In this document: positions 1,674-41,434 of the stretch, one piece after another
How the letters are laid out: the number at the start of each line of letters is the position of its first letter
How positions within the stretch are numbered: position 1 is the stretch's first letter
Assembly: GCA_002269645.1 (NCBI GenBank)
Contig: NIVC01004016.1
Coordinates: 1 to 64,000 of the forward strand
DNA from: Macrostomum lignano
Taxonomy: Eukaryota
Direction of reading: 5' to 3'
Length of the DNA stretch: 64,000 bases
Program-made: the position numbers and the translations under genes
Notes under the pieces: generated by a model
The model's database searches: none
Told to the model about the DNA's origin: nothing
The model's input: the letters and a program-made list of their open reading frames with translations, nothing else

Positions 1674-1712
1674 CAAGGACCACTGTAATATAGCTATATA
1701 CAGTGGTCCTTG
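1674..1712. repeat. Near-perfect 39-bp palindrome flanked by a 12-bp direct repeat
   Basis: Arms caaggaccactgta (1674-1687) and tacagtggtccttg (1699-1712) surround atatagctata. The direct repeat gcttttatcaag occurs at 1666-1677 and 1713-1724. Confidence 0.8.
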
Positions 1713-2236
1713 GCTTTTATCAAGATAAGCTGGATTTTTAACAACAGAGTTCTTTTTGGGTAGATTAGAAAGAAATTAGGTTGCTCTTAAAGATTGAGCT
1801 GTTGTGTATTCAAACATATACAAGTACATAAATACTGTACTGTACGAAATTATAAGAAGCTTTCTGGTAGTTATAGAAGGCAAGGATAGGATTAACTTAT
1901 TAAATAGAGCATGAATAGTACGTATCAGCTAGTCATTCGCAATTACACCCTACAGCAAAGTATCTATCTTAACAACATTCGAGTGAATATGCGCTGGAAA
2001 AATTTAAAGCGACAAGAGATTATGTTTACAATATAGCGCTATTGCTAACAGTCTGTTTTCCGACCCTATTTTAAAATTGATTTCAGCATGCATGTTTGTG
2101 GAGAGTTTATGTACAGTACGAGCTTGTACTAGCGAGGTAGTGAATCATAGCGTTAACAAGCTGCAATCCTAGGGGTGGCTGTTAACTGTTTTTTAATGCG
2201 ATTGATATGATACGATCATCATCGTACGATCATTTC

Positions 2237-2260
2237 ATCATGTATGGTACCATACATGAT
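2237..2260. repeat. Perfect 24-bp palindrome at the left edge of the satellite-bearing element
   Basis: atcatgtatggtaccatacatgat equals its own reverse complement. Confidence 0.9.
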
Positions 2261-5200
2261 CAAGCGCGTCGCCACCGGGGGGGGGGGAACAGGGGGAAAG
2301 TAAAAGCTATTGCCAATGCCCCCCTCACCACCACCTTGTGACTCGTTGTGGTAATTAATAATTTTTCTTAAGGGCGCTAAAATATAGCGCCTTCGGCGCC
2401 AAAATGAGTGCTGCGGCGCTAAAAGTAATGCCTGCGGCGCTAAAATGAGTATCTACGGCGCTAAAAGGAATGCCTGCGCGCTAAAATGAGTATCTACGGC
2501 GCTAAAAGGAATGCCTGCGCGCTAAAATGAGTATCTACGGCGCTAAAAGGAATGCCTGCGCGCTAAAATGAGTATCTACGGCGCTAAAAGGAATGCCTGC
2601 GGCGCTAAAATGAGTATCTACGGCGCTAAAAGGAATGCCTGCGGCGCTAAAATGAGTATCTACGGCGCTAAAAGGAATGCCTGCGGCGCTAAAATGAGTA
2701 TCTACGGCGCTAAAAGGAATGCTCGCGGCGCTAAAATGAGTATCTACGGCGCTAAAAGGAATGCCTGCGGCGCTAAAATGAGTATCTACGGCGCTAAAAG
2801 GAATGCCTGCGGCGCTAAAATGAGTATCTACGGCGCTAAAATGAGTATCTACGGCGCTAAAAGGAATGCCTGCGGCGCTAAAATGAGTATCTACGGCGCT
2901 AAAAGGAATGCCTGCGGCGCTAAAATGAGTATCTACGGCGCTAAAAGGAATGCCTGCGGCGCTAAAATGAGTATCTACGGCGCTAAAAGGAATGCCTGCG
3001 GCGCTAAAATGAGTATCTACGGCGCTAAAAGGAATGCCTGCGGCGCTAAAATGAGTATCTACGGCGCTAAAAGGAATGCCTGCGGCGCTAAAATGAGTAT
3101 CTACGGCGCTAAAAGGAATGCCTGCGGCGCTAAAATGAGTATCTACGGCGCTAAAAGGAATGCCTGCGGCGCTAAAATGAGTATCTACGGCGCTAAAAGG
3201 AATGCCTGCGGCGCTAAAATGAGTATCTACGGCGCTAAAAGGAATGCCTGCGGCGCTAAAATGAGTATCTACGGCGCTAAAAGGAATGCCTGCGGCGCTA
3301 AAATGAGTATCTACGGCGCTAAAAGGAATGCCTGCGGCGCTAAAATGAGTATCTACGGCGCTAAAAGGAATGCCTGCGGCGCTAAAATGAGTATCTACGG
3401 CGCTAAAAGGAATGCCTGCGGCGCTAAAATGAGTATCTACGGCGCTAAAAGGAATGCCTGCGGCGCTAAAATGAGTATCTACGGCGCTAAAAGGAATGCC
3501 TGCGGCGCTAAAATGAGTATCTACGGCGCTAAAAGGAATGCCTGCGGCGCTAAAATGAGTATCTACGGCGCTAAAAGGAATGCCTGCGGCGCTAAAATGA
3601 GTATCTACGGCGCTAAAAGGAATGCCTGCGGCGCTAAAATGAGTATCTACGGCGCTAAAAGGAATGCCTGCGGCGCTAAAATGAGTATCTACGGCGCTAA
3701 AAGGAATGCCTGCGGCGCTAAAATGAGTATCTACGGCGCTAAAAGGAATGCCTGCGGCGCTAAAATGAGTATCTACGGCGCTAAAAGGAATGCCTGCGGC
3801 GCTAAAATGAGTATCTACGGCGCTAAAAGGAATGCCTGCGGCGCTAAAATGAGTATCTACGGCGCTAAAAGGAATGCCTGCGGCGCTAAAATGAGTATCT
3901 ACGGCGCTAAAAGGAATGCCTGCGGCGCTAAAATGAGTATCTACGGCGCTAAAAGGAATGCCTGCGGCGCTAAAATGAGTATCTACGGCGCTAAAAGGAA
4001 TGCCTGCGGCGCTAAAATGAGTATCTACGGCGCTAAAAGGAATGCCTGCGGCGCTAAAATGAGTATCTACGGCGCTAAAAGGAATGCCTGCGGCGCTAAA
4101 ATGAGTATCTACGGCGCTAAAAGGAATGCCTGCGGCGCTAAAATGAGTATCTACGGCGCTAAAAGGAATGCCTGCGGCGCTAAAATGAGTATCTACGGCG
4201 CTAAAAGGAATGCCTGCGGCGCTAAAATGAGTATCTACGGCGCTAAAAGGAATGCCTGCGGCGCTAAAATGAGTATCTACGGCGCTAAAAGGAATGCCTG
4301 CGGCGCTAAAATGAGTATCTACGGCGCTAAAAGGAATGCCTGCGGCGCTAAAATGAGTATCTACGGCGCTAAAAGGAATGCCTGCGGCGCTAAAATGAGT
4401 ATCTACGGCGCTAAAAGGAATGCCTGCGGCGCTAAAATGAGTATCTACGGCGCTAAAAGGAATGCCTGCGGCGCTAAAATGAGTATCTACGGCGCTAAAA
4501 GGAATGCCTGCGGCGCTAAAATGAGTATCTACGGCGCTAAAAGGAATGCCTGCGGCGCTAAAATGAGTATCTACGGCGCTAAAAGGAATGCCTGCGGCGC
4601 TAAAATGAGTATCTACGGCGCTAAAAGGAATGCCTGCGGCGCTAAAATGAGTATCTACGGCGCTAAAAGGAATGCCTGCGGCGCTAAAATGAGTATCTAC
4701 GGCGCTAAAAGGAATGCCTGCGGCGCTAAAATGAGTATCTACGGCGCTAAAAGGAATGCCTGCGGCGCTAAAATGAGTATCTACGGCGCTAAAAGGAATG
4801 CCTGCGGCGCTAAAATGAGTATCTACGGCGCTAAAAGGAATGCCTGCGGCGCTAAAATGAGTATCTACGGCGCTAAAAGGAATGCCTGCGGCGCTAAAAT
4901 GAGTATCTACGGCGCTAAAAGGAATGCCTGCGGCGCTAAAATGAGTATCTACGGCGCTAAAAGGAATGCCTGCGGCGCTAAAATGAGTATCTACGGCGCT
5001 AAAAGGAATGCCTGCGGCGCTAAAATGAGTATCTACGGCGCTAAAAGGAATGCCTGCGGCGCTAAAATGAGTATCTACGGCGCTAAAAGGAATGCCTGCG
5101 GCGCTAAAATGAGTATCTACGGCGCTAAAAGGAATGCCTGCGGCGCTAAAATGAGTATCTACGGCGCTAAAATGAGTATCTACGGCGCTAAAAGGAATGC

Positions 5201-8200
5201 CTGCGGCGCTAAAATGAGTATCTACGGCGCTAAAAGGAATGCCTGCGGCGCTAAAATGAGTATCTACGGCGCTAAAAGGAATGCCTGCGGCGCTAAAATG
5301 AGTATCTACGGCGCTAAAAGGAATGCCTGCGGCGCTAAAATGAGTATCTACGGCGCTAAAAGGAATGCCTGCGGCGCTAAAATGAGTATCTACGGCGCTA
5401 AAAGGAATGCCTGCGGCGCTAAAATGAGTATCTACGGCGCTAAAAGGAATGCCTGCGGCGCTAAAATGAGTATCTACGGCGCTAAAAGGAATGCCTGCGG
5501 CGCTAAAATGAGTATCTACGGCGCTAAAAGGAATGCCTGCGGCGCTAAAATGAGTATCTACGGCGCTAAAAGGAATGCCTGCGGCGCTAAAATGAGTATC
5601 TACGGCGCTAAAAGGAATGCCTGCGGCGCTAAAATGAGTATCTACGGCGCTAAAAGGAATGCCTGCGGCGCTAAAATGAGTATCTACGGCGCTAAAAGGA
5701 ATGCCTGCGGCGCTAAAATGAGTATCTACGGCGCTAAAAGGATCTGCGGCGCTAAAAGGAATGCCTGCGGCGCTAAAATGAGTATCTACGGCGCTAAAAG
5801 GAATGCCTGCGGCGCTAAAATGAGTATCTACGGCGCTAAAAGGAATGCCTGCGGCGCTAAAATGAGTATCTACGGCGCTAAAAGGAATGCCTGCGGCGCT
5901 AAAATGAGTATCTACGGCGCTAAAAGGAATGCCTGCGGCGCTAAAATGAGTATCTACGGCGCTAAAAGGAATGCCTGCGGCGCTAAAATGAGTATCTACG
6001 GCGCTAAAAGGAATGCCTGCGGCGCTAAAATGAGTATCTACGGCGCTAAAAGGAATGCCTGCGGCGCTAAAATGAGTATCTACGGCGCTAAAAGGAATGC
6101 CTGCGGCGCTAAAATGAGTATCTACGGCGCTAAAAGGAATGCCTGCGGCGCTAAAATGAGTATCTACGGCGCTAAAAGGAATGCCTGCGGCGCTAAAATG
6201 AGTATCTACGGCGCTAAAAGGAATGCCTGCGGCGCTAAAATGAGTATCTACGGCGCTAAAAGGAATGCCTGCGGCGCTAAAATGAGTATCTACGGCGCTA
6301 AAAGGAATGCCTGCGGCGCTAAAATGCTACGGCGCTAAATGAGTATCTACGGCGCTAAAAGGAATGCCTGCGGCGCTAAAATGAGTATCTACGGCGCTAA
6401 AAGGAATGCCTGCGGCGCTAAAATGAGTATCTACGGCGCTAAAAGGAATGCCTGCGGCGCTAAAATGAGTATCTACGGCGCTAAAAGGAATGCCTGCGGC
6501 GCTAAAATGAGTATCTACGGCGCTAAAAGGAATGCCTGCGGCGCTAAAATGAGTATCTACGGCGCTAAAAGGAATGCCTGCGGCGCTAAAATGAGTATCT
6601 ACGGCGCTAAAAGGAATGCCTGCGGCGCTAAAATGAGTATCTACGGCGCTAAAAGGAATGCCTGCGGCGCTAAAATGAGTATCTACGGCGCTAAAAGGAA
6701 TGCCTGCGGCGCTAAAATGAGTATCTACGGCGCTAAAAGGAATGCCTGCGGCGCTAAAATGAGTATCTACGGCGCTAAAAGGAATGCCTGCGGCGCTAAA
6801 ATGAGTATCTACGGCGCTAAAAGGAATGCCTGCGGCGCTAAAATGAGTATCTACGGCGCTAAAAGGAATGCCTGCGGCGCTAAAATGAGTATCTACGGCG
6901 CTAAAAGGAATGCCTGCGGCGCTAAAATGAGTATCTACGGCGCTAAAAGGAATGCCTGCGGCGCTAAAATGAGTATCTACGGCGCTAAAAGGAATGCCTG
7001 CGGCGCTAAAATGAGTATCTACGGCGCTAAAAGGAATGCCTGCGGCGCTAAAATGAGTATCTACGGCGCTAAAAGGAATGCCTGCGGCGCTAAAATGAGT
7101 ATCTACGGCGCTAAAAGGAATGCCTGCGGCGCTAAAATGAGTATCTACGGCGCTAAAAGGAATGCCTGCGGCGCTAAAATGAGTATCTACGGCGCTAAAA
7201 GGAATGCCTGCGGCGCTAAAATGAGTATCTACGGCGCTAAAAGGAATGCCTGCGGCGCTAAAATGAGTATCTACGGCGCTAAAAGGAATGCCTGCGGCGC
7301 TAAAATGAGTATCTACGGCGCTAAAATGAGTATCTACGGCGCTAAAAGGAATGCCTGCGGCGCTAAAATGAGTATCTACGGCGCTAAAAGGAATGCCTGC
7401 GGCGCTAAAATGAGTATCTACGGCGCTAAAAGGAATGCCTGCGGCGCTAAAATGAGTATCTACGGCGCTAAAAGGAATGCCTGCGGCGCTAAAATGAGTA
7501 TCTACGGCGCTAAAAGGAATGCCTGCGGCGCTAAAATGAGTATCTACGGCGCTAAAAGGAATGCCTGCGGCGCTAAAATGAGTATCTACGGCGCTAAAAG
7601 GAATGCCTGCGGCGCTAAAATGAGTATCTACGGCGCTAAAAGGAATGCCTGCGGCGCTAAAATGAGTATCTACGGCGCTAAAAGGAATGCCTGCGGCGCT
7701 AAAATGAGTATCTACGGCGCTAAAAGGAATGCCTGCGGCGCTAAAATGAGTATCTACGGCGCTAAAAGGAATGCCTGCGGCGCTAAAATGAGTATCTACG
7801 GCGCTAAAAGGAATGCCTGCGGCGCTAAAATGAGTATCTACGGCGCTAAAAGGAATGCCTGCGGCGCTAAAATGAGTATCTACGGCGCTAAAAGGAATGC
7901 CTGCGGCGCTAAAATGAGTATCTACGGCGCTAAAAGGAATGCCTGCGGCGCTAAAATGAGTATCTACGGCGCTAAAAGGAATGCCTGCGGCGCTAAAATG
8001 AGTATCTACGGCGCTAAAAGGAATGCCTGCGGCGCTAAAATGAGTATCTACGGCGCTAAAAGGAATGCCTGCGGCGCTAAAATGAGTATCTACGGCGCTA
8101 AAAGGAATGCCTGCGGCGCTAAAATGAGTATCTACGGCGCTAAAAGGAATGCCTGCGGCGCTAAAATGAGTATCTACGGCGCTAAAAGGAATGCCTGCGG

Positions 8201-11200
8201 CGCTAAAATGAGTATCTACGGCGCTAAAAGGAATGCCTGCGGCGCTAAAATGAGTATCTACGGCGCTAAAAGGAATGCCTGCGGCGCTAAAATGAGTATC
8301 TACGGCGCTAAAAGGAATGCCTGCGGCGCTAAAATGAGTATCTACGGCGCTAAAAGGAATGCCTGCGGCGCTAAAATGAGTATCTACGGCGCTAAAAGGA
8401 ATGCCTGCGGCGCTAAAATGAGTATCTACGGCGCTAAAAGGAATGCCTGCGGCGCTAAAATGAGTATCTACGGCGCTAAAAGGAATGCCTGCGGCGCTAA
8501 AATGAGTATCTACGGCGCTAAAAGGAATGCCTGCGGCGCTAAAATGAGTATCTACGGCGCTAAAAGGAATGCCTGCGGCGCTAAAATGAGTATCTACGGC
8601 GCTAAAAGGAATGCCTGCGGCGCTAAAATGAGTATCTACGGCGCTAAAAGGAATGCCTGCGGCGCTAAAATGAGTATCTACGGCGCTAAAAGGAATGCCT
8701 GCGGCGCTAAAATGAGTATCTACGGCGCTAAAAGGAATGCCTGCGGCGCTAAAATGAGTATCTACGGCGCTAAAAGGAATGCCTGCGGCGCTAAAATGAG
8801 TATCTACGGCGCTAAAAGGAATGCCTGCGGCGCTAAAATGAGTATCTACGGCGCTAAAAGGAATGCCTGCGGCGCTAAAATGAGTATCTACGGCGCTAAA
8901 AGGAATGCCTGCGGCGCTAAAATGAGTATCTACGGCGCTAAAAGGAATGCCTGCGGCGCTAAAATGAGTATCTACGGCGCTAAAAGGAATGCCTGCGGCG
9001 CTAAAATGAGTATCTACGGCGCTAAAAGGAATGCCTGCGGCGCTAAAATGAGTATCTACGGCGCTAAAAGGAATGCCTGCGGCGCTAAAATGAGTATCTA
9101 CGGCGCTAAAAGGAATGCCTGCGGCGCTAAAATGAGTATCTACGGCGCTAAAAGGAATGCCTGCGGCGCTAAAATGAGTATCTACGGCGCTAAAAGGAAT
9201 GCCTGCGGCGCTAAAATGAGTATCTACGGCGCTAAAAGGAATGCCTGCGGCGCTAAAATGAGTATCTACGGCGCTAAAAGGAATGCCTGCGGCGCTAAAA
9301 TGAGTATCTACGGCGCTAAAAGGAATGCCTGCGGCGCTAAAATGAGTATCTACGGCGCTAAAAGGAATGCCTGCGGCGCTAAAATGAGTATCTACGGCGC
9401 TAAAAGGAATGCCTGCGGCGCTAAAATGAGTATCTACGGCGCTAAAAGGAATGCCTGCGGCGCTAAAATGAGTATCTACGGCGCTAAAAGGAATGCCTGC
9501 GGCGCTAAAATGAGTATCTACGGCGCTAAAAGGAATGCCTGCGGCGCTAAAATGAGTATCTACGGCGCTAAAAGGAATGCCTGCGGCGCTAAAATGAGTA
9601 TCTACGGCGCTAAAAGGAATGCCTGCGGCGCTAAAATGAGTATCTACGGCGCTAAAAGGAATGCCTGCGGCGCTAAAATGAGTATCTACGGCGCTAAAAG
9701 GAATGCCTGCGGCGCTAAAATGAGTATCTACGGCGCTAAAAGGAATGCCTGCGGCGCTAAAATGAGTATCTACGGCGCTAAAAGGAATGCCTGCGGCGCT
9801 AAAATGAGTATCTACGGCGCTAAAAGGAATGCCTGCGGCGCTAAAATGAGTATCTACGGCGCTAAAAGGAATGCCTGCGGCGCTAAAATGAGTATCTACG
9901 GCGCTAAAAGGAATGCCTGCGGCGCTAAAATGAGTATCTACGGCGCTAAAAGGAATGCCTGCGGCGCTAAAATGAGTATCTACGGCGCTAAAAGGAATGC
10001 CTGCGGCGCTAAAATGAGTATCTACGGCGCTAAAAGGAATGCCTGCGGCGCTAAAATGAGTATCTACGGCGCTAAAAGGAATGCCTGCGGCGCTAAAATG
10101 AGTATCTACGGCGCTAAAAGGAATGCCTGCGGCGCTAAAATGAGTATCTACGGCGCTAAAAGGAATGCCTGCGGCGCTAAAATGAGTATCTACGGCGCTA
10201 AAAGGAATGCCTGCGGCGCTAAAATGAGTATCTACGGCGCTAAAAGGAATGCCTGCGGCGCTAAAATGAGTATCTACGGCGCTAAAAGGAATGCCTGCGG
10301 CGCTAAAATGAGTATCTACGGCGCTAAAAGGAATGCCTGCGGCGCTAAAATGAGTATCTACGGCGCTAAAAGGAATGCCTGCGGCGCTAAAATGAGTATC
10401 TACGGCGCTAAAAGGAATGCCTGCGGCGCTAAAATGAGTATCTACGGCGCTAAAAGGAATGCCTGCGGCGCTAAAATGAGTATCTACGGCGCTAAAAGGA
10501 ATGCCTGCGGCGCTAAAATGAGTATCTACGGCGCTAAAAGGAATGCCTGCGGCGCTAAAATGAGTATCTACGGCGCTAAAAGGAATGCCTGCGGCGCTAA
10601 AATGAGTATCTACGGCGCTAAAAGGAATGCCTGCGGCGCTAAAATGAGTATCTACGGCGCTAAAAGGAATGCCTGCGGCGCTAAAATGAGTATCTACGGC
10701 GCTAAAAGGAATGCCTGCGGCGCTAAAATGAGTATCTACGGCGCTAAAAGGAATGCCTGCGGCGCTAAAATGAGTATCTACGGCGCTAAAAGGAATGCCT
10801 GCGGCGCTAAAATGAGTATCTACGGCGCTAAAAGGAATGCCTGCGGCGCTAAAATGAGTATCTACGGCGCTAAAAGGAATGCCTGCGGCGCTAAAATGAG
10901 TATCTACGGCGCTAAAAGGAATGCCTGCGGCGCTAAAATGAGTATCTACGGCGCTAAAAGGAATGCCTGCGGCGCTAAAATGAGTATCTACGGCGCTAAA
11001 AGGAACGGCGCTAAAAGCCTGCGGCGCTAAAATGAGTATCTACGGCGCTAAAAGGAATGCCTGCGGCGCTAAAATGAGTATCTACGGCGCTAAAAGGAAT
11101 GCCTGCGGCGCTAAAATGAGTATCTACGGCGCTAAAAGGAATGCCTGCGGCGCTAAAATGAGTATCTACGGCGCTAAAAGGAATGCCTGCGGCGCTAAAA

Positions 11201-26200: not shown

Positions 26201-29200
26201 CTAAAATGAGTATCTACGGCGCTAAAAGGAATGCCTGCGGCGCTAAAATGAGTATCTACGGCGCTAAAAGGAATGCCTGCGGCGCTAAAATGAGTATCTA
26301 CGGCGCTAAAAGGAATGCCTGCGGCGCTAAAATGAGTATCTACGGCGCTAAAAGGAATGCCTGCGGCGCTAAAATGAGTATCTACGGCGCTAAAAGGAAT
26401 GCCTGCGGCGCTAAAATGAGTATCTACGGCGCTAAAAGGAATGCCTGCGGCGCTAAAATGAGTATCTACGGCGCTAAAAGGAATGCCTGCGGCGCTAAAA
26501 TGAGTATCTACGGCGCTAAAAGGAATGCCTGCGGCGCTAAAATGAGTATCTACGGCGCTAAAAGGAATGCCTGCGGCGCTAAAATGAGTATCTACGGCGC
26601 TAAAAGGAATGCCTGCGGCGCTAAAATGAGTATCTACGGCGCTAAAAGGAATGCCTGCGGCGCTAAAATGAGTATCTACGGCGCTAAAAGGAATGCCTGC
26701 GGCGCTAAAATGAGTATCTACGGCGCTAAAAGGAATGCCTGCGGCGCTAAAATGAGTATCTACGGCGCTAAAAGGAATGCCTGCGGCGCTAAAATGAGTA
26801 TCTACGGCGCTAAAAGGAATGCCTGCGGCGCTAAAATGAGTATCTACGGCGCTAAAAGGAATGCCTGCGGCGCTAAAATGAGTATCTACGGCGCTAAAAG
26901 GAATGCCTGCGGCGCTAAAATGAGTATCTACGGCGCTAAAAGGAATGCCTGCGGCGCTAAAATGAGTATCTACGGCGCTAAAAGGAATGCCTGCGGCGCT
27001 AAAATGAGTATCTACGGCGCTAAAAGGAATGCCTGCGGCGCTAAAATGAGTATCTACGGCGCTAAAAGGAATGCCTGCGGCGCTAAAATGAGTATCTACG
27101 GCGCTAAAAGGAATGCCTGCGGCGCTAAAATGAGTATCTACGGCGCTAAAAGGAATGCCTGCGGCGCTAAAATGAGTATCTACGGCGCTAAAAGGAATGC
27201 CTGCGGCGCTAAAATGAGTATCTACGGCGCTAAAAGGAATGCCTGCGGCGCTAAAATGAGTATCTACGGCGCTAAAAGGAATGCCTGCGGCGCTAAAATG
27301 AGTATCTACGGCGCTAAAAGGAATGCCTGCGGCGCTAAAATGAGTATCTACGGCGCTAAAAGGAATGCCTGCGGCGCTAAAATGAGTATCTACGGCGCTA
27401 AAAGGAATGCCTGCGGCGCTAAAATGAGTATCTACGGCGCTAAAAGGAATGCCTGCGGCGCTAAAATGAGTATCTACGGCGCTAAAAGGAATGCCTGCGG
27501 CGCTAAAATGAGTATCTACGGCGCTAAAAGGAATGCCTGCGGCGCTAAAATGAGTATCTACGGCGCTAAAAGGAATGCCTGCGGCGCTAAAATGAGTATC
27601 TACGGCGCTAAAAGGAATGCCTGCGGCGCTAAAATGAGTATCTACGGCGCTAAAAGGAATGCCTGCGGCGCTAAAATGAGTATCTACGGCGCTAAAAGGA
27701 ATGCCTGCGGCGCTAAAATGAGTATCTACGGCGCTAAAAGGAATGCCTGCGGCGCTAAAATGAGTATCTACGGCGCTAAAAGGAATGCCTGCGGCGCTAA
27801 AATGAGTATCTACGGCGCTAAAAGGAATGCCTGCGGCGCTAAAATGAGTATCTACGGCGCTAAAAGGAATGCCTGCGGCGCTAAAATGAGTATCTACGGC
27901 GCTAAAAGGAATGCCTGCGGCGCTAAAATGAGTATCTACGGCGCTAAAAGGAATGCCTGCGGCGCTAAAATGAGTATCTACGGCGCTAAAAGGAATGCCT
28001 GCGGCGCTAAAATGAGTATCTACGGCGCTAAAAGGAATGCCTGCGGCGCTAAAATGAGTATCTACGGCGCTAAAAGGAATGCCTGCGGCGCTAAAATGAG
28101 TATCTACGGCGCTAAAAGGAATGCCTGCGGCGCTAAAATGAGTATCTACGGCGCTAAAAGGAATGCCTGCGGCGCTAAAATGAGTATCTACGGCGCTAAA
28201 AGGAATGCCTGCGGCGCTAAAATGAGTATCTACGGCGCTAAAAGGAATGCCTGCGGCGCTAAAATGAGTATCTACGGCGCTAAAAGGAATGCCTGCGGCG
28301 CTAAAATGAGTATCTACGGCGCTAAAAGGAATGCCTGCGGCGCTAAAATGAGTATCTACGGCGCTAAAAGGAATGCCTGCGGCGCTAAAATGAGTATCTA
28401 CGGCGCTAAAAGGAATGCCTGCGGCGCTAAAATGAGTATCTACGGCGCTAAAAGGAATGCCTGCGGCGCTAAAATGAGTATCTACGGCGCTAAAAGGAAT
28501 GCCTGCGGCGCTAAAATGAGTATCTACGGCGCTAAAAGGAATGCCTGCGGCGCTAAAATGAGTATCTACGGCGCTAAAAGGAATGCCTGCGGCGCTAAAA
28601 TGAGTATCTACGGCGCTAAAAGGAATGCCTGCGGCGCTAAAATGAGTATCTACGGCGCTAAAAGGAATGCCTGCGGCGCTAAAATGAGTATCTACGGCGC
28701 TAAAAGGAATGCCTGCGGCGCTAAAATGAGTATCTACGGCGCTAAAAGGAATGCCTGCGGCGCTAAAATGAGTATCTACGGCGCTAAAAGGAATGCCTGC
28801 GGCGCTAAAATGAGTATCTACGGCGCTAAAAGGAATGCCTGCGGCGCTAAAATGAGTATCTACGGCGCTAAAAGGAATGCCTGCGGCGCTAAAATGAGTA
28901 TCTACGGCGCTAAAAGGAATGCCTGCGGCGCTAAAATGAGTATCTACGGCGCTAAAAGGAATGCCTGCGGCGCTAAAATGAGTATCTACGGCGCTAAAAG
29001 GAATGCCTGCGGCGCTAAAATGAGTATCTACGGCGCTAAAAGGAATGCCTGCGGCGCTAAAATGAGTATCTACGGCGCTAAAAGGAATGCCTGCGGCGCT
29101 AAAATGAGTATCTACGGCGCTAAAAGGAATGCCTGCGGCGCTAAAATGAGTATCTACGGCGCTAAAAGGAATGCCTGCGGCGCTAAAATGAGTATCTACG

Positions 29201-32200
29201 GCGCTAAAAGGAATGCCTGCGGCGCTAAAATGAGTATCTACGGCGCTAAAAGGAATGCCTGCGGCGCTAAAATGAGTATCTACGGCGCTAAAAGGAATGC
29301 CTGCGGCGCTAAAATGAGTATCTACGGCGCTAAAAGGAATGCCTGCGGCGCTAAAATGAGTATCTACGGCGCTAAAAGGAATGCCTGCGGCGCTAAAATG
29401 AGTATCTACGGCGCTAAAAGGAATGCCTGCGGCGCTAAAATGAGTATCTACGGCGCTAAAAGGAATGCCTGCGGCGCTAAAATGAGTATCTACGGCGCTA
29501 AAAGGAATGCCTGCGGCGCTAAAATGAGTATCTACGGCGCTAAAAGGAATGCCTGCGGCGCTAAAATGAGTATCTACGGCGCTAAAAGGAATGCCTGCGG
29601 CGCTAAAATGAGTATCTACGGCGCTAAAAGGAATGCCTGCGGCGCTAAAATGAGTATCTACGGCGCTAAAAGGAATGCCTGCGGCGCTAAAATGAGTATC
29701 TACGGCGCTAAAATGGTATCTACGGCGCTAAAAGGAATGCCTGCGGCGCTAAAATGAGTATCTACGGCGCTAAAAGGAATGCCTGCGGCGCTAAAATGAG
29801 TATCTACGGCGCTAAAAGGAATGCCTGCGGCGCTAAAATGAGTATCTACGGCGCTAAAAGGAATGCCTGCGGCGCTAAAATGAGTATCTACGGCGCTAAA
29901 AGGAATGCCTGCGGCGCTAAAATGAGTATCTACGGCGCTAAAAGGAATGCCTGCGGCGCTAAAATGAGTATCTACGGCGCTAAAAGGAATGCCTGCGGCG
30001 CTAAAATGAGTATCTACGGCGCTAAAAGGAATGCCTGCGGCGCTAAAATGAGTATCTACGGCGCTAAAAGGAATGCCTGCGGCGCTAAAATGAGTATCTA
30101 CGGCGCTAAAAGGAATGCCTGCGGCGCTAAAATGAGTATCTACGGCGCTAAAAGGAATGCCTGCGGCGCTAAAATGAGTATCTACGGCGCTAAAAGGAAT
30201 GCCTGCGGCGCTAAAATGAGTATCTACGGCGCTAAAAGGAATGCCTGCGGCGCTAAAATGAGTATCTACGGCGCTAAAAGGAATGCCTGCGGCGCTAAAA
30301 TGAGTATCTACGGCGCTAAAAGGAATGCCTGCGGCGCTAAAATGAGTATCTACGGCGCTAAAAGGAATGCCTGCGGCGCTAAAATGAGTATCTACGGCGC
30401 TAAAAGGAATGCCTGCGGCGCTAAAATGAGTATCTACGGCGCTAAAAGGAATGCCTGCGGCGCTAAAATGAGTATCTACGGCGCTAAAAGGAATGCCTGC
30501 GGCGCTAAAATGAGTATCTACGGCGCTAAAAGGAATGCCTGCGGCGCTAAAATGAGTATCTACGGCGCTAAAAGGAATGCCTGCGGCGCTAAAATGAGTA
30601 TCTACGGCGCTAAAAGGAATGCCTGCGGCGCTAAAATGAGTATCTACGGCGCTAAAAGGAATGCCTGCGGCGCTAAAATGAGTATCTACGGCGCTAAAAG
30701 GAATGCCTGCGGCGCTAAAATGAGTATCTACGGCGCTAAAAGGAATGCCTGCGGCGCTAAAATGAGTATCTACGGCGCTAAAAGGAATGCCTGCGGCGCT
30801 AAAATGAGTATCTACGGCGCTAAAAGGAATGCCTGCGGCGCTAAAATGAGTATCTACGGCGCTAAAAGGAATGCCTGCGGCGCTAAAATGAGTATCTACG
30901 GCGCTAAAAGGAATGCCTGCGGCGCTAAAATGAGTATCTACGGCGCTAAAAGGAATGCCTGCGGCGCTAAAATGAGTATCTACGGCGCTAAAAGGAATGC
31001 CTGCGGCGCTAAAATGAGTATCTACGGCGCTAAAAGGAATGCCTGCGGCGCTAAAATGAGTATCTACGGCGCTAAAAGGAATGCCTGCGGCGCTAAAATG
31101 AGTATCTACGGCGCTAAAAGGAATGCCTGCGGCGCTAAAATGAGTATCTACGGCGCTAAAAGGAATGCCTGCGGCGCTAAAATGAGTATCTACGGCGCTA
31201 AAAGGAATGCCTGCGGCGCTAAAATGAGTATCTACGGCGCTAAAAGGAATGCCTGCGGCGCTAAAATGAGTATCTACGGCGCTAAAAGGAATGCCTGCGG
31301 CGCTAAAATGAGTATCTACGGCGCTAAAAGGAATGCCTGCGGCGCTAAAATGAGTATCTACGGCGCTAAAAGGAATGCCTGCGGCGCTAAAATGAGTATC
31401 TACGGCGCTAAAAGGAATGCCTGCGGCGCTAAAATGAGTATCTACGGCGCTAAAAGGAATGCCTGCGGCGCTAAAATGAGTATCTACGGCGCTAAAAGGA
31501 ATGCCTGCGGCGCTAAAATGAGTATCTACGGCGCTAAAAGGAATGCCTGCGGCGCTAAAATGAGTATCTACGGCGCTAAAAGGAATGCCTGCGGCGCTAA
31601 AATGAGTATCTACGGCGCTAAAAGGAATGCCTGCGGCGCTAAAATGAGTATCTACGGCGCTAAAAGGAATGCCTGCGGCGCTAAAATGAGTATCTACGGC
31701 GCTAAAAGGAATGCCTGCGGCGCTAAAATGAGTATCTACGGCGCTAAAAGGAATGCCTGCGGCGCTAAAATGAGTATCTACGGCGCTAAAAGGAATGCCT
31801 GCGGCGCTAAAATGAGTATCTACGGCGCTAAAAGGAATGCCTGCGGCGCTAAAATGAGTATCTACGGCGCTAAAAGGAATGCCTGCGGCGCTAAAATGAG
31901 TATCTACGGCGCTAAAAGGAATGCCTGCGGCGCTAAAATGAGTATCTACGGCGCTAAAAGGAATGCCTGCGGCGCTAAAATGAGTATCTACGGCGCTAAA
32001 AGGAATGCCTGCGGCGCTAAAATGAGTATCTACGGCGCTAAAAGGAATGCCTGCGGCGCTAAAATGAGTATCTACGGCGCTAAAAGGAATGCCTGCGGCG
32101 CTAAAATGAGTATCTACGGCGCTAAAAGGAATGCCTGCGGCGCTAAAATGAGTATCTACGGCGCGCTAAAAGGAATGCCTGCGGCGCTAAAATGAGTATC

Positions 32201-35200
32201 TACGGCGCTAAAAGGAATGCCTGCGGCGCTAAAATGAGTATCTACGGCGCTAAAAGGAATGCCTGCGGCGCTAAAATGAGTATCTACGGCGCTAAAAGGA
32301 ATGCCTGCGGCGCTAAAATGAGTATCTACGGCGCTAAAAGGAATGCCTGCGGCGCTAAAATGAGTATCTACGGCGCTAAAAGGAATGCCTGCGGCGCTAA
32401 AATGAGTATCTACGGCGCTAAAAGGAATGCCTGCGGCGCTAAAATGAGTATCTACGGCGCTAAAAGGAATGCCTGCGGCGCTAAAATGAGTATCTACGGC
32501 GCTAAAAGGAATGCCTGCGGCGCTAAAATGAGTATCTACGGCGCTAAAAGGAATGCCTGCGGCGCTAAAATGAGTATCTACGGCGCTAAAAGGAATGCCT
32601 GCGGCGCTAAAATGAGTATCTACGGCGCTAAAAGGAATGCCTGCGGCGCTAAAATGAGTATCTACGGCGCTAAAAGGAATGCCTGCGGCGCTAAAATGAG
32701 TATCTACGGCGCTAAAAGGAATGCCTGCGGCGCTAAAATGAGTATCTACGGCGCTAAAAGGAATGCCTGCGGCGCTAAAATGAGTATCTACGGCGCTAAA
32801 AGGAATGCCTGCGGCGCTAAAATGAGTATCTACGGCGCTAAAAGGAATGCCTGCGGCGCTAAAATGAGTATCTACGGCGCTAAAAGGAATGCCTGCGGCG
32901 CTAAAATGAGTATCTACGGCGCTAAAAGGAATGCCTGCGGCGCTAAAATGAGTATCTACGGCGCTAAAAGGAATGCCTGCGGCGCTAAAATGAGTATCTA
33001 CGGCGCTAAAAGGAATGCCTGCGGCGCTAAAATGAGTATCTACGGCGCTAAAAGGAACGGCGCTAAAAGCCTGCGGCGCTAAAATGAGTATCTACGGCGC
33101 TAAAAGGAATGCCTGCGGCGCTAAAATGAGTATCTACGGCGCTAAAAGGAATGCCTGCGGCGCTAAAATGAGTATCTACGGCGCTAAAAGGAATGCCTGC
33201 GGCGCTAAAATGAGTATCTACGGCGCTAAAAGGAATGCCTGCGGCGCTAAAATGAGTATCTACGGCGCTAAAAGGAATGCCTGCGGCGCTAAAATGAGTA
33301 TCTACGGCGCTAAAAGGAATGCCTGCGGCGCTAAAATGAGTATCTACGGCGCTAAAAGGAATGCCTGCGGCGCTAAAATGAGTATCTACGGCGCTAAAAG
33401 GAATGCCTGCGGCGCTAAAATGAGTATCTACGGCGCTAAAAGGAATGCCTGCGGCGCTAAAATGAGTATCTACGGCGCTAAAAGGAATGCCTGCGGCGCT
33501 AAAATGAGTATCTACGGCGCTAAAAGGAATGCCTGCGGCGCTAAAATGAGTATCTACGGCGCTAAAAGGAATGCCTGCGGCGCTAAAATGAGTATCTACG
33601 GCGCTAAAAGGAATGCCTGCGGCGCTAAAATGAGTATCTACGGCGCTAAAAGGAATGCCTGCGGCGCTAAAATGAGTATCTACGGCGCTAAAAGGAATGC
33701 CTGCGGCGCTAAAATGAGTATCTACGGCGCTAAAAGGAATGCCTGCGGCGCTAAAATGAGTATCTACGGCGCTAAAAGGAATGCCTGCGGCGCTAAAATG
33801 AGTATCTACGGCGCTAAAAGGAATGCCTGCGGCGCTAAAATGAGTATCTACGGCGCTAAAAGGAATGCCTGCGGCGCTAAAATGAGTATCTACGGCGCTA
33901 AAAGGAATGCCTGCGGCGCTAAAATGAGTATCTACGGCGCTAAAAGGAATGCCTGCGGCGCTAAAATGAGTATCTACGGCGCTAAAAGGAATGCCTGCGG
34001 CGCTAAAATGAGTATCTACGGCGCTAAAAGGAATGCCTGCGGCGCTAAAATGAGTATCTACGGCGCTAAAAGGAATGCCTGCGGCGCTAAAATGAGTATC
34101 TACGGCGCTAAAAGGAATGCCTGCGGCGCTAAAATGAGTATCTACGGCGCTAAAAGGAATGCCTGCGGCGCTAAAATGAGTATCTACGGCGCTAAAAGGA
34201 ATGCCTGCGGCGCTAAAATGAGTATCTACGGCGCTAAAAGGAATGCCTGCGGCGCTAAAATGAGTATCTACGGCGCTAAAAGGAATGCCTGCGGCGCTAA
34301 AATGAGTATCTACGGCGCTAAAAGGAATGCCTGCGGCGCTAAAATGAGTATCTACGGCGCTAAAAGGAATGCCTGCGGCGCTAAAATGAGTATCTACGGC
34401 GCTAAAATGCTACGGCGCTAAAAGGAATGCCTGCGGCGCTAAAATGAGTATCTACGGCGCTAAAAGGAATGCCTGCGGCGCTAAAATGAGTATCTACGGC
34501 GCTAAAAGGAATGCCTGCGGCGCTAAAATGAGTATCTACGGCGCTAAAAGGAATGCCTGCGGCGCTAAAATGAGTATCTACGGCGCTAAAAGGAATGCCT
34601 GCGGCGCTAAAATGAGTATCTACGGCGCTAAAAGGAATGCCTGCGGCGCTAAAATGAGTATCTACGGCGCTAAAAGGAATGCCTGCGGCGCTAAAATGAG
34701 TATCTACGGCGCTAAAAGGAATGCCTGCGGCGCTAAAATGAGTATCTACGGCGCTAAAATGAGTATCTACGGCGCTAAAAGGAATGCCTGCGGCGCTAAA
34801 ATGAGTATCTACGGCGCTAAAAGGAATGCCTGCGGCGCTAAAATGAGTATCTACGGCGCTAAAAGGAATGCCTGCGGCGCTAAAATGAGTATCTACGGCG
34901 CTAAAAGGAATGCCTGCGGCGCTAAAATGAGTATCTACGGCGCTAAAAGGAATGCCTGCGGCGCTAAAATGAGTATCTACGGCGCTAAAAGGAATGCCTG
35001 CGGCGCTAAAATGAGTATCTACGGCGCTAAAAGGAATGCCTGCGGCGCTAAAATGAGTATCTACGGCGCTAAAAGGAATGCCTGCGGCGCTAAAATGAGT
35101 ATCTACGGCGCTAAAAGGAATGCCTGCGGCGCTAAAATGAGTATCTACGGCGCTAAAAGGAATGCCTGCGGCGCTAAAATGAGTATCTACGGCGCTAAAA

Positions 35201-36358
35201 GGAATGCCTGCGGCGCTAAAATGAGTATCTACGGCGCTAAAAGGAATGCCTGCGGCGCTAAAATGAGTATCTACGGCGCTAAAAGGAATGCCTGCGGCGC
35301 TAAAATGAGTATCTACGGCGCTAAAAGGAATGCCTGCGGCGCTAAAATGAGTATCTACGGCGCTAAAAGGAATGCCTGCGGCGCTAAAATGAGTATCTAC
35401 GGCGCTAAAAGGAATGCCTGCGGCGCTAAAATGAGTATCTACGGCGCTAAAAGGAATGCCTGCGGCGCTAAAATGAGTATCTACGGCGCTAAAAGGAATG
35501 CCTGCGGCGCTAAAATGAGTATCTACGGCGCTAAAAGGAATGCCTGCGGCGCTAAAATGAGTATCTACGGCGCTAAAAGGAATGCCTGCGGCGCTAAAAT
35601 GAGTATCTACGGCGCTAAAAGGAATGCCTGCGGCGCTAAAATGAGTATCTACGGCGCTAAAAGAGTATCTACGGCGCTAAAAGGAATGCCTGCGGCGCTA
35701 AAATGAGTATCTACGGCGCTAAAAGGAATGCCTGCGGCGCTAAAATGAGTATCTACGGCGCTAAAAGGAATGCCTGCGGCGCTAAAATGAGTATCTACGG
35801 CGCTAAAAGGAATGCCTGCGGCGCTAAAATGAGTATCTACGGCGCTAAAAGGAATGCCTGCGGCGCTAAAATGAGTATCTACGGCGCTAAAAGGAATGCC
35901 TGCGGCGCTAAAATGAGTATCTACGGCGCTAAAAGGAATGCCTGCGGCGCTAAAATGAGTATCTACGGCGCTAAAAGGAATGCCTGCGGCGCTAAAATGA
36001 GTATCTACGGCGCTAAAAGGAATGCCTGCGGCGCTAAAATGAGTATCTACGGCGCTAAAAGGAATGCCTGCGGCGCTAAAATGAGTATCTACGGCGCTAA
36101 AAGGAATGCCTGCGGCGCTAAAATGAGTATCTACGGCGCTAAAAGGAATGCCTGCGGCGCTAAAATGAGTATCTACGGCGCTAAAAGGCGCTAAAAGAGT
36201 ATCGGCGCTAAAAGAATGCCTGCAGCGGCGCCAAAATGAGCGCTGACAACACGCTTCTTAAAATAATGGAAATGTAGGAATTTAGTCATGTACATGTTGA
36301 ATTATTTGCTTTGTGCCCCCCCCTCACCATATAAAATCCATGGCGACTCCCTGATCAT
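2256..36358. mobile_element. Putative non-autonomous DNA transposon (MITE-like shell) whose internal tandem repeat has expanded to ~34 kb
   Basis: Imperfect terminal inverted repeats: left atgatcaagcgcgtcgcca (2256-2274) versus the reverse complement of the right end (36341-36358), atgatcagggagtcgcca. There is a subterminal G-run on the left, and gcccccc(cc)tcacca occurs near both ends (~2318 and ~36315). No clean direct target-site duplication was found. Confidence 0.55.
2373..36245. repeat. Satellite DNA array: ~800 copies of the 42-bp dimer ggcgctaaaatgagtatctac-ggcgctaaaaggaatgcctgc
   Basis: Read directly from the sequence. The two 21-bp subunits are identical at 16/21 positions and share the core cggcgctaaaa. 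Units are degenerate only at the two edges; interior changes are rare short indels or subunit skips. Confidence 0.99.
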
Positions 36359-36392
36359 ATACATCTTATCTACATGTATCTATTGATGTACA

Positions 36393-37118: not shown

Positions 37119-37810
37119 NNNNNNNNNNNNNNNNNNNNNNNNNNNNNNNNNNNNNNNNNNNNNNNNNNNNNNNNNNNNNNNNNNNNNNNNNNNNNNNNNN
37201 NNNNNNNNNNNNNNNNNNNNNNNNNNNNNNNNNNNNNNNNNNNNNNNNNNNNNNNNNNNNNNNNNNNNNNNNNNNNNNNNNNNNNNNNNNNNNNNNNNNN
37301 NNNNNNNNNNNNNNNNNNNNNNNNNNNNNNNNNNNNNNNNNNNNNNNNNNNNNNNNNNNNNNNNNNNNNNNNNNNNNNNNNNNNNNNNNNNNNNNNNNNN
37401 NNNNNNNNNNNNNNNNNNNNNNNNNNNNNNNNNNNNNNNNNNNNNNNNNNNNNNNNNNNNNNNNNNNNNNNNNNNNNNNNNNNNNNNNNNNNNNNNNNNN
37501 NNNNNNNNNNNNNNNNNNNNNNNNNNNNNNNNNNNNNNNNNNNNNNNNNNNNNNNNNNNNNNNNNNNNNNNNNNNNNNNNNNNNNNNNNNNNNNNNNNNN
37601 NNNNNNNNNNNNNNNNNNNNNNNNNNNNNNNNNNNNNNNNNNNNNNNNNNNNNNNNNNNNNNNNNNNNNNNNNNNNNNNNNNNNNNNNNNNNNNNNNNNN
37701 NNNNNNNNNNNNNNNNNNNNNNNNNNNNNNNNNNNNNNNNNNNNNNNNNNNNNNNNNNNNNNNNNNNNNNNNNNNNNNNNNNNNNNNNNNNNNNNNNNNN
37801 NNNNNNNNNN
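37119..37810. other. Assembly gap (692 N)
   Basis: Run of n characters. Confidence 1.
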
Positions 37811-38094
37811 TCGCCTGTTTGCACTGTGCAGTATTGGAAATTGCTAGTCATATGCAGGTAGTTTAGTTTGAAATTCTAGGAGAGGGATGACAAAACTGTG
37901 TAGTTAAAACTGAAATGTCAATAGATAATTTCAATTTTTTGTATGCGCATAGTCAGCAAATATCAATAAATTCAGTTGATCACGAAGCTACAGAGTGCTG
38001 AGAACGTCGGTTTTAAAAATCGATTTTTCGAGTTATTTTCTGCTACTGCATTATCCCCAGACTTTGCTAGTCACTTAATTAGCCAATTAGTTAA

Positions 38095-38534
38095 TCACCC
38101 AGTCAATCAGTTGGTCACCCAGTCAATCAGTTGGTCACCCAGTCAATCAGTTGGTCACCCAGTCAATCAGTTGGTCACCCAGTCAATCAGTTGGTCACCC
38201 AGTCAATCAGTTGGTCACCCAGTCAAACAGTTGGTCACCCAGTCAAACAGTTGGTCACCCAGTCAATCAGTTGGTCACCCAGTCAATCTGTTGGTCACCC
38301 AGTCAAACAGTTGGTCACCCAGTCAAACAGTTGGTCACCCAGTCAAACAGTTGGTCACCCAGTCAATCTGTTGGTCACCCAGTCAATCAGTTGGTCACCC
38401 AATCAGTTGGTCACCCAGTCAATCAGTTGGTCACCCAGTCAATCAGTTGGTCACCCAGTCAATCAGTCGGTCACCCAGTCAATCAGTTGGTCACCCAGTC
38501 AATCAGTCGGTCACCCAGTCAATCAGTTGGTCAC
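38095..38534. repeat. 20-bp minisatellite (tcacccagtcaatcagttgg)n, ~22 copies
   Basis: Direct reading. Variants include aaacag, aatctg and gtcgg, plus one 4-bp-shorter unit near 38400. It explains the overlapping low-complexity ORFs here. Confidence 0.97.
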
Positions 38535-39504: not shown

Positions 39505-39603
39505 ATCTGAAGAGTGGCACTATCAAGTTCGGCACACGAATATACCACCTGAAAAGATGGCTAAGAGGCAATACCATTAGACTAGTGCTACTGCTAGACA
39601 CCG

Positions 39604-41198: not shown

Positions 41199-41434
41199 TC
41201 TAAGCAAGGTGGAATCCCTTTAACTGCAGTAGTCAGTGTCTGTAAACATGGACCAGATGTAGGCAGTAATGAGGATGCAGGGAAACTTTTGCAATAAATA
41301 AAGCTTGGCTATTGAAACTTCGGGCATCCAGCATTCAGACGGGTGCAAGCGTTCTCTAAGGGTTGCCATTGTCTTTGAAAGATAAATTAGTGCCTGTGCG
41401 CCAATACTAGTGGATGTTAATATGGATGCGTTTC

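What the first reader, a model, noticed from the sequence alone, without database searches (positions are those of the whole stretch)
2256..36358. A ~34-kb satellite apparently born inside a small DNA-transposon shell
Seen: the array is enclosed by imperfect inverted termini, with gcccccctcacca near both ends. The first and last degenerate units are a 19/20 direct match (cggcgccaaaatgagtgctg at 2394-2413 and cggcgccaaaatgagcgctg at 36226-36245). Established: satellites arising from internal repeats of MITEs and Helitron-like elements are known in Drosophila and bivalves. Inference: a few-hundred-bp element had its central A-B dimer amplified ~800-fold in place, leaving both original ends readable. 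This would be a rare complete snapshot of satellite birth and is the best candidate for an undescribed system in this window.
Basis: partly seen in the sequence, partly recalled or inferred. Interest (0 to 1): 0.8.

Follow-up and report, generated by a model that had tools for sequence, protein, structure and literature searches.

The report
Transposon-borne minisatellite grown into a satellite
A 34-kb block of a 42-bp repeat in the flatworm Macrostomum lignano lies inside the recognisable remains of a small cut-and-paste transposon whose relatives carry 0 or 17-23 copies of the same 21-bp unit: a clean new example of a known way satellites arise.

Summary
Positions 2389-36186 are 805 copies of a 42-bp dimer made of two 21-mers, A and B; 1590 of 1615 subunits are exact. 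Both edges carry older-looking units that match 19/20.

The window is a Macrostomum lignano scaffold (Mlig_3_7). Elsewhere in this assembly I found relatives of the flanks:
- An element in ALAD intron 2 has perfect 16-bp TIRs, a perfect 8-bp TSD and 23, 19 or 17 copies of a 21-bp unit intermediate between A and B in the three homeologs. Its shells are ~99% identical.
- A 192-bp array-less copy has perfect 15-bp TIRs and an empty site in the homeolog.
- A truncated array-less copy resembles the window's own subfamily.

The window's flanks align significantly with these shells and share their architecture: a CA-start terminus, then a G-run on the left; a C-run, then the terminus on the right. 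The window has an 18/22 inverted terminal match (p~0.001).

No TSD is detectable in the window. The ancestral units were not A-B dimers.

The kind is known (Tetris, DTC84/pearl, miDNA4); the family appears undescribed. Array length rests on a 2015-era PacBio/Canu assembly.

The parts
2237..2260 (.). Perfect 24-bp palindrome ATCATGTATGGTACCATACATGAT, directly abutting the left terminus. It lies outside the element by the family register.
2253..2274 (+). Left arm of the imperfect terminal inverted repeat (TACATGATCAAGCGCGTCGCCA). By register with family members the terminus proper starts at 2261 (CAAGCGCGTCGCCACC).
2277..2287 (+). G11 run just inside the left terminus. This is a family hallmark: G7 in the ALAD copy and G7 in MITE-192.
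2319..2330 (+). Subterminal motif CCCCCCTCACCA. It is repeated directly at 36318, and MITE-192 has CATTGCCCCCCCTCA at the matching place.
2336..2392 (+). Array-proximal left shell, homologous to the left shell of the ALAD-intron element (58-nt alignment, 0/400 shuffles). It includes the degenerate 'unit 0' at 2373-2393.
2394..2434 (+). Ancestral-type edge units: A' (CGGCGCCAAAATGAGTGCTG), closest to the ALAD unit U, and B' (CGGCGCTAAAAGTAATGCCTG).
2435..36186 (+). Homogenised core: about 800 copies of the 42-bp A+B dimer (two 21-mers). A 31-nt complex variant recurs at 10993, 25600 and 33045.
36187..36245 (+). Degenerate right edge units, ending in A' (CGGCGCCAAAATGAGCGCTG, 36226-36245). This matches the first edge unit 19/20.
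36246..36353 (+). Right shell. Positions 36255-36339 are colinear with the right shell of the ALAD element (1/400 shuffles) and with the array-less copy at L142 19974-20071 (0/400). It contains the C8 run at 36316-36323 and the motif at 36318-36329.
36341..36361 (-). Right arm of the imperfect terminal inverted repeat (reverse complement TATATGATCAGGGAGTCGCCA). By family register the element ends at 36353 (reverse complement CAGGGAGTCGCC...).
37119..37810 (.). 692-N scaffold gap (SSPACE join). Colinearity with the sister contig starts exactly at 37811, so the array-bearing piece is linked to the genes only through this gap.

Best explanation
The 34-kb array is the internal minisatellite of a small non-autonomous TIR (cut-and-paste) DNA transposon, expanded in place.

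The family is present in Macrostomum lignano in several forms. The basic element is ~190 bp: CA-starting 15-16-bp TIRs, a G-run inside the left end, a C-run inside the right end, and an 8-bp TSD. One lineage acquired a central 21-bp tandem repeat (unit U = CGGCGCTAAAATGAGTGCCTG), whose copy number drifts by slippage or unequal exchange.

At the window's locus two adjacent, diverged units became a 42-bp register and were amplified about 800-fold. A differs from U by 3 changes and B by 2. The amplification replaced all but the outermost units, while the ~130-bp and ~110-bp shells stayed at the two ends and decayed.

Shown: the family, its mobility, the in-place length variation of the array, the homology of both window junctions and shells, and the family-type termini.

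Inferred: the amplification mechanism (unequal crossing-over in 42-bp register, or rolling-circle or break-induced replication); its recency, suggested by near-perfect homogeneity; and that both ends come from one insertion.
For: 1. A bona fide element carries the same repeat. In L142 positions 10495-11333 lie in ALAD intron 2. The element has perfect 16-bp TIRs CATAGGCGTAGGAACG, a perfect 8-bp TSD CCAACATC, and 23 units of 21 bp.

2. The shell is fixed and the array is fluid. The three homeologs carry it at the same site with 23, 19 and 17 units and different variant orders, while the shells are ~99% identical.

3. Mobility. MITE-192 (L142 19359-19550, perfect 15-bp TIRs) is absent from homeolog L143, which shows a clean empty site with one copy of ATTAGGCC.

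4. The window junctions are homologous and in the same phase as in the ALAD copy. With repeat units included, z=20 on the left and z=11 on the right. With repeat units excluded, the left shell aligns over 58 nt (0/400 shuffles) and the right shell over 86 nt (1/400).

5. An array-less copy of the window's subfamily aligns to both window shells (2/400 and 0/400). Its terminus CAGCGGAGCC...+G12 parallels the window's CAGGGAGTCGCC...+G8.

6. The window's terminal inverted repeat is 18/22 (p~0.001). G/C runs of 7 or more occur only once per 5.7 kb, yet one sits just inside each end.

7. Unit genealogy. U-A differ by 3, U-B by 2 and A-B by 5. The edge units are closest to U, and intermediate variants (GAATGCCTG, GTGCCTA) exist in the ALAD arrays.

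8. Control. Of 13 minisatellite arrays scanned for a perfect TIR plus TSD, only the ALAD one is positive.
Against: - No TSD in the window. By family register the flanking 8-mers (TACATGAT / ATCATATA) match 3/8 directly. The best TSD under free scanning is 7/8, which 21% of shuffles reach.
- The outermost ~70 nt of the left shell and the terminal 15 nt on both sides are too diverged from the ALAD and MITE-192 copies to align significantly on their own.
- Only about 190 kb of this genome could be sampled, so copy number, consensus and the autonomous partner are unknown.
- The array is longer than I can show any read to span. The assembly is Canu on 2015-era PacBio data plus SSPACE, and a scaffold gap lies 760 bp downstream. 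Array length, homogeneity (polishing can erase variants) and even the pairing of the two ends could be assembly-dependent.
Confidence: 0.75

Rival explanations
1. Hybrid or rearranged element. The array and its two ends derive from two different copies of the family. These copies were joined by ectopic recombination between their internal arrays, or by aberrant transposition. The locus would then not be one intact insertion that simply grew.
For: There is no matching TSD although the two termini still match 18/22. A perfect 24-bp palindrome abuts the left end. A similar 17+3+17 palindrome abuts the truncated end of another family member, which hints at break and hairpin events at element ends.
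Against: Both ends carry the same subfamily-specific terminus (GTCGCCA core, against GTAGGAA or GCGGAAC in the other members). That is most simply explained by one element. TSD loss by point mutation cannot be excluded with only 8 nt.
Confidence: 0.2
2. Assembly artefact. The array's length, its near-perfect homogeneity or the joining of its two flanks was produced by the assembler or polisher. The real locus may be much shorter, or the two ends may belong to different loci.
For: The assembly is Canu on 2015-era PacBio reads plus SSPACE scaffolding. Interior variants are almost all indels, as expected from PacBio consensus error. A scaffold gap lies 760 bp away, and the sister contig gives no support for the junction region. 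15% of this genome is tandem repeat, and the assembly has redundant homeologous contigs.
Against: Left-type shell sits at the left and right-type shell at the right, in the correct orientation and phase, with a matching subfamily terminus. A 31-nt complex variant recurs three times at irregular spacing with different neighbouring variants, which is not simple read re-use. Even if the length were inflated, the TE-shell-plus-expanded-array conclusion would stand.
Confidence: 0.15
3. Reverse direction. A pre-existing GGCGCTAAAA satellite came first, and a MITE lineage later captured a few units from it. The window array would then be the source, not the product.
For: Array-less family members exist (MITE-192 and the truncated copy), so the repeat is not an obligatory part of the element. 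Capture of tandem repeats by MITEs has been proposed for miDNA4 (PMC12628747).
Against: The window array is itself bounded on both sides by shell sequence and family termini. Its outermost units are the U-type found in the MITE, while the interior A/B units are derived. The array-less copy contains single-copy sequence resembling the unit and 'unit 0' (AAAATGAGTC...; GGCCCTAATTAATAGC), which is compatible with de novo origin inside the element.
Confidence: 0.07
4. Ordinary satellite with chance flank resemblance; no transposon is involved.
For: Within the window alone the flank similarities are weak. The 12-mer has E=0.7, and whole-flank alignments are at the edge of the shuffle distribution.
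Against: Independent loci show the same junctions inside a perfect TIR/TSD element, plus an empty site for a family member.
Confidence: 0.03

Closest known systems
miDNA4 (Tc1/mariner MITE with internal satellite) in Xenopus; Scalvenzi & Pollet model as summarised in PMC12628747
   Same: A MITE carries an internal tandem repeat present as one to many copies. The arrays lengthen inside the element. Long arrays become 'classical' satDNA as the terminal inverted repeats decay. That is the stage series seen here: 0 units, then 17-23 units, then ~1600 units with degenerate termini.
   Different: The superfamily signature differs (TA TSD for Tc1/mariner against 8 bp here). The unit here is only 21 bp, homogenised as a 42-bp dimer. 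The host is a flatworm.
Tetris / TIR-220 of Drosophila virilis (PMC4079207)
   Same: A non-autonomous DNA transposon whose pre-existing internal tandem repeats were amplified within the element into satDNA-like arrays. An array-poor relative (DAIBAM) shares the termini.
   Different: Tetris is a foldback element whose repeats lie inside long TIRs in both orientations, with 220-bp units and assembled arrays of up to 66 copies. Here there is a single central unidirectional array of 21-bp units and short TIRs.
DTC84 / pearl-type tandem-repeat-containing MITEs of bivalves (PMC3879986)
   Same: Modular MITE: flanking 'cassette' sequences with short inverted repeats around a central array whose copy number varies between copies. 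Edge variants have fixed positions.
   Different: DTC84 has up to five ~160-bp-class core repeats, a microsatellite module and a putative AA target duplication. These elements are now linked to Helitron-like elements. Here the TIRs are perfect, the TSD is 8 bp and the units are 21 bp.
Cg_HINE Helentron non-autonomous elements of Crassostrea gigas (PMC7492417); DINE-TR1 in Drosophila
   Same: Mobile elements disperse short satDNA-like arrays that can expand locally.
   Different: Helitron and Helentron elements lack TIRs and TSDs. The elements here have both, so they are not Helitron-like.

Membership tests
Tandem-repeat-containing MITE (non-autonomous TIR DNA transposon) | Terminal inverted repeats | tested here: met
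   ALAD copy 16/16 and MITE-192 15/15, both perfect. The window has 18/22, p~0.001.
Tandem-repeat-containing MITE (non-autonomous TIR DNA transposon) | Target-site duplication of fixed length flanking the element | tested here: inconclusive
   Met for relatives: 8-bp CCAACATC, perfect in three homeologs, and 8-bp ATTAGGCC confirmed by an empty site, with one copy carrying a 1-nt indel. Not met in the window: 3/8 in family register, and the best free scan of 7/8 is not significant.
Tandem-repeat-containing MITE (non-autonomous TIR DNA transposon) | Evidence of transposition (insertion polymorphism or empty site) | tested here: met
   MITE-192 is present in L142 and absent from homeolog L143, with flanks colinear to the base. 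No empty site could be obtained for the window locus.
Tandem-repeat-containing MITE (non-autonomous TIR DNA transposon) | Small, non-coding, multiple dispersed copies | tested here: met
   Four loci in ~190 kb sampled, with shells of 192-355 bp. Genome-wide copy number is not testable with these tools.
Tandem-repeat-containing MITE (non-autonomous TIR DNA transposon) | Central tandem array variable in copy number between copies while the flanks are conserved | tested here: met
   0, 17, 19, 23 and ~1615 units of 21 bp.
hAT superfamily | 8-bp TSD | tested here: met
   Not exclusive: as I recall, P, Merlin, Zisupton and Novosib elements also make ~8-bp TSDs.
hAT superfamily | Terminal YARNG motif in the TIR | tested here: inconclusive
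   Termini read CATAG, CAGGC, CAAGC, CAGGG and CAGCG. Only two of the five fit YARNG.
hAT superfamily | Autonomous partner with the same TIRs encoding a hAT (DDE/BED, hAT-C) transposase | not testable with these tools
   This needs a whole-genome search of M. lignano, and no eukaryotic genome collection was searchable by DNA.
Helitron/Helentron-carried satellite (DINE-TR1, Cg_HINE) | No TIRs, no TSD, hairpin near the 3' end, insertion at AT/TT | tested here: not met
   Perfect TIRs and 8-bp TSDs are present.
Foldback element (Tetris-like) | Long TIRs themselves built of the tandem repeats, in inverted orientation | tested here: not met
   All 1615 units are on one strand, and the only other match to the unit core in the window is an isolated one at 56388, also on the + strand. 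The TIRs are 15-22 nt.
Satellite DNA (classical sense) | Long (tens of kb), homogeneous head-to-tail array with a higher-order register | tested here: met
   33.8 kb, 99% matches, 42-bp dimer register. This holds in the assembly only; it was not verified on reads.
Satellite DNA (classical sense) | High genomic abundance or heterochromatic/centromeric location | not testable with these tools
   Requires k-mer counts in reads, or FISH.

The most novel reading that the evidence does not exclude
This recently active MITE family (8-bp TSD) may be a general vector that seeds 21-bp minisatellites across the M. lignano genome and contributes to its unusually high tandem-repeat load (15%). If so, the window shows a gene-adjacent seed that has just crossed to satellite scale. 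Because M. lignano is transgenic-capable, inbred and neopolyploid, with homeologs as internal controls, array birth and turnover could then be followed experimentally. The palindromes abutting element ends might mark hairpin-type breaks that trigger amplification.
Probability: 0.15. Interest if true: 0.6.

Novelty: new member of a known kind. Interest (0 to 1): 0.4.

Why it matters
It adds a well-resolved series from a phylum (Platyhelminthes) where TE-to-satellite transitions have, as far as I could find, not been described. The series runs from an array-less mobile element, to an element with a length-polymorphic 17-23-unit array, to a ~1600-unit array with decaying termini.

It also helps explain part of why the M. 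lignano genome is so rich in tandem repeats and so hard to assemble.

It flags an annotation hazard. The satellite is open in two reading frames, with ORFs up to 4517 aa, and an older gene model already translated the intronic copy into ALAD.

It does not reveal a new mechanism.

Tried and rejected
1. Metagenome and viral pattern scans with CGGCGCYAAAATGAGYRY. The pattern was too short.

2. Literature search for the unit strings found 0 papers. Searches for satellites or MITEs in Macrostomum found nothing specific.

3. Walking to the array position on the homeologous contigs.
- The mito-carrier product exists only on the window contig.
- I reconstructed the 3-exon BCL7-like product and fetched the sister contig.
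- Colinearity begins exactly after the window's N-gap, and the preceding 1295 bp match nothing. This gave no empty-site information.

4. A gag ORF look-up to sample more genome was not on record.

5. Empty site for the ALAD element: all three homeologs are filled.

6. TSD scan in the window was not significant.

7. The other 12 minisatellites in the window and in L142 have no perfect TIR/TSD shell.

8. Coding reading of the array ORFs is rejected. The 14-aa periodic ORFs have no homologs except one mis-annotated model.

9. Rfam search on the right flank found nothing. ARAGORN found no tRNAs.
Full report
WHAT IS THERE

TRF reports one array at 2389-36186 with period 42, 805.4 copies and 99% matches. 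Parsing on the core GCGC[TC]AAAA gives 1615 subunits. Of these, 800 are exactly A (GCGCTAAAATGAGTATCTACG) and 790 are exactly B (GCGCTAAAAGGAATGCCTGCG), in strict alternation. There are 32 departures. In the interior they are single-unit losses or small indels, apart from one 2-nt change at 2707. The substitution variants are at the two edges. A 31-nt complex variant recurs at 10993, 25600 and 33045.

The cited motif is not inverted. CCCCCCTCACCA lies on the + strand at both 2319 and 36318. As a lone 12-mer it is a chance-level match (E=0.7).

It is marginal when whole flanks are scanned. It is significant (about 1 in 1000) when the search is limited to where the family architecture predicts the termini.

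WHERE IT COMES FROM

A neighbouring single-exon gene identified the window as NIVC01004016.1 of GCA_002269645.1. That is the Macrostomum lignano Mlig_3_7 assembly. It was built with Canu on earlier PacBio data plus SSPACE scaffolding. The genome is 15% simple or tandem repeat, and the assembly is redundant because the DV1 line carries additional large chromosomes; the species is a neopolyploid.

The 692-N gap at 37119-37810 is therefore a scaffold join. On the sister contig, colinearity with the window starts exactly at 37811, and the 1295 bp before it match nothing in the window. The array-bearing piece is tied to the gene-bearing piece only through that gap. The homeolog could not be used to look for an empty site.

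THE KEY COMPARATORS

The satellite is open in two frames. A search with the two periodic peptides hit one protein, an old M. lignano ALAD gene model containing THFSAAG repeats. Fetching the ALAD loci of this assembly showed a 21-bp array in intron 2 with unit U = CGGCGCTAAAATGAGTGCCTG. It lies inside an 839-bp element with perfect 16-bp TIRs (CATAGGCGTAGGAACG) and a perfect 8-bp TSD (CCAACATC).

All three homeologous ALAD copies carry it at the same site. Their shells are ~99% identical, but they hold 23, 19 and 17 units with different variant orders. This shows directly that the internal array turns over in place much faster than its shell.

A generic scan for a perfect TIR plus TSD around 13 minisatellites in the window and L142 was positive only for this one.

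Following up clusters of G/C homopolymers, which otherwise occur once per 5.7 kb, revealed two more members.

- MITE-192 (L142 19359-19550) has perfect 15-bp TIRs CAGGCGCCGCGGAAC, the same G-run/C-run architecture and the CATTGCCCCCCCTCA motif, but no 21-bp array. The homeolog L143 lacks exactly this segment and shows one copy of ATTAGGCC. This is an empty site, so the family transposed after the homeologs diverged and makes 8-bp TSDs.
- A left-truncated, array-less copy lies at L142 ~19905-20071 (also in L143). Its right terminus (reverse complement CAGCGGAGCC...TATTTTA+G12) resembles the window's (CAGGGAGTCGCC...ATTTTATATGGTGA+G8). It aligns colinearly with both window shells (2/400 and 0/400 shuffles).

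HOW THE WINDOW FITS

The array-proximal junctions of the window and the ALAD element are homologous and in the same repeat phase.

- Left: ATATAGCGCCTTCGGCGCCAAAATGAGTGC against ACATAGCGCCTACGGCGCCAAAATGAGTGC.
- Right: AAAATGAGCGCTGACAACA-CGCTTCTTAAAATAAT against AAAATGAGTGCTGAGAAGATGGATTCTGAAAATAAT.
- With the repeat units included, these give z of about 20 and 11.
- With the repeat units excluded, the left shells align over 58 nt (0/400 shuffles) and the right shells over 86 nt (1/400).

MITE-192 and the ALAD left shell align over ~135 nt (0/400), which ties the array-less and array-bearing forms together.

In a six-terminus alignment both window ends fall in register with the family: CA[A/G]G...GTCGCCA followed by the G-run. 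By that register the element spans 2261-36353. The inverted similarity continues 8 nt further out (7/8). The flanking 8-mers are therefore inverted, not direct (3/8), and no TSD is detectable. A perfect 24-bp palindrome (2237-2260) abuts the left end.

UNIT GENEALOGY

U differs from A by 3 positions and from B by 2, while A and B differ by 5. Both window edge units are closest to U. The ALAD arrays contain the intermediate variants ...GAATGCCTG (one step from B) and ...GTGCCTA (toward A). The ancestral array was therefore U-type. A and B are two diverged neighbours that became the 42-bp amplification register, replacing all but the outermost units.

MECHANISM

Shown:
- A mobile TIR element family with an 8-bp TSD.
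- A lineage of it with an internal 21-bp array.
- In-place copy-number change of that array.
- A locus where the same array, in the same shell, is about 70-fold longer and homogenised as a dimer.

Inferred:
- Expansion was by unequal exchange in 42-bp register, or by rolling-circle or break-induced replication.
- It was recent, given 98.5% exact subunits. Polishing of multi-mapped reads may exaggerate this.
- A4 tracts phased every 21 bp (two helical turns) may give intrinsic curvature, as in many satellites. I did not test this.

The lack of a TSD leaves open a hybrid origin, such as ectopic recombination between two copies or aberrant transposition, or simple decay.

COMPARISON WITH KNOWN SYSTEMS

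This is the pathway described for miDNA4 in Xenopus: arrays lengthen inside the MITE and the termini decay to leave classical satDNA (PMC12628747). It is also the pathway described for Tetris/TIR-220 in D. virilis (PMC4079207) and for DTC84/pearl MITEs in bivalves (PMC3879986).

It is not Helitron- or Helentron-like, because TIRs and TSDs are present. It is not a foldback element, because there is a single unidirectional central array.

An 8-bp TSD is compatible with hAT but also with several other superfamilies. The termini fit the hAT YARNG motif only in part, and no autonomous partner could be sought. The superfamily stays open.

I found no description of this repeat or family in the searchable literature.

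VERDICT

It is overstated as to novelty and as to 'both original ends'.

This is a new member of a known kind. The main caveats are the missing TSD, the tiny genomic sample (~190 kb) and the unverified length of an array assembled from 2015-era PacBio reads.

Noticed in passing
window 37119-37810: A 692-N scaffold gap lies 760 bp downstream of the array. The homeologous contig NIVC01001346.1 (L145) is colinear with the window only from the first base after the gap, and its preceding 1295 bp match nothing in the window.
   Followed up: yes
window 38084-38534 vs L145 (window orientation ~1600-3578): The 20-bp minisatellite CAATCAGTTGGTCACCCAGT has 22.8 copies in the window but spans ~2 kb on the homeologous contig. 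This is another strongly length-polymorphic array.
   Followed up: partly
window 38824-45234: A string of unrelated minisatellites (periods 17, 21, 64, 4/153) lies in and around the mito-carrier and BCL7-like genes. None has a perfect TIR/TSD shell in my scan.
   Followed up: partly
window 2237-2260; L142 19865-19901: Perfect palindromes directly abut family element ends: a 24-bp one at the window's left terminus, and a 17+3+17 one at the truncated left end of the array-less copy. These may be hairpin or break footprints. Unexplained.
   Followed up: no
P0044 (UniRef A0A1I8GI.., older M. lignano gene model) / L142 10662-11156: An older ALAD gene model translates the intronic 21-bp array into protein (THFSAAG repeats). 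This is an annotation artefact. The window array likewise gives ORFs of up to 4517 aa.
   Followed up: yes
L142 19359-19550 and 19905-20071: Two members of the family lie only ~355 bp apart. One is a recent insertion, absent in the homeolog; the other is older and present in both. This may reflect a local insertion preference or nesting.
   Followed up: partly
window 10993, 25600, 33045: The same 31-nt complex variant (GCGCTAAAAGGAACG + GCGCTAAAAGCCTGCG) recurs three times, 14607 and 7445 bp apart, with different neighbouring variants. It could reflect large internal duplications or recurrent assembly of the same reads.
   Followed up: partly
window ~40800-40870 (G13 at 40830); L142 ~11440-11480: The segment ...GGCATGTACACTCTCTGTGCCTTGGGG... 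beside a G13 run in the mito-carrier intron resembles sequence just upstream of the ALAD element. It is probably another dispersed repeat. ARAGORN finds no tRNA-like fold.
   Followed up: no
window 58962-60005 (+): This ORF has Retrotrans_gag and zf-CCHC domains, so it is a retrotransposon gag. Its exact product is not annotated anywhere in the collection.
   Followed up: partly
window 39607-41198 (-) vs L145: The mitochondrial-carrier (SLC25-like) gene is annotated only on the window's contig (product P0042). No such gene is called in the fetched stretches of the sister contig (L140, L145). Its closest non-Macrostomum relatives are at most 37% identical.
   Followed up: partly
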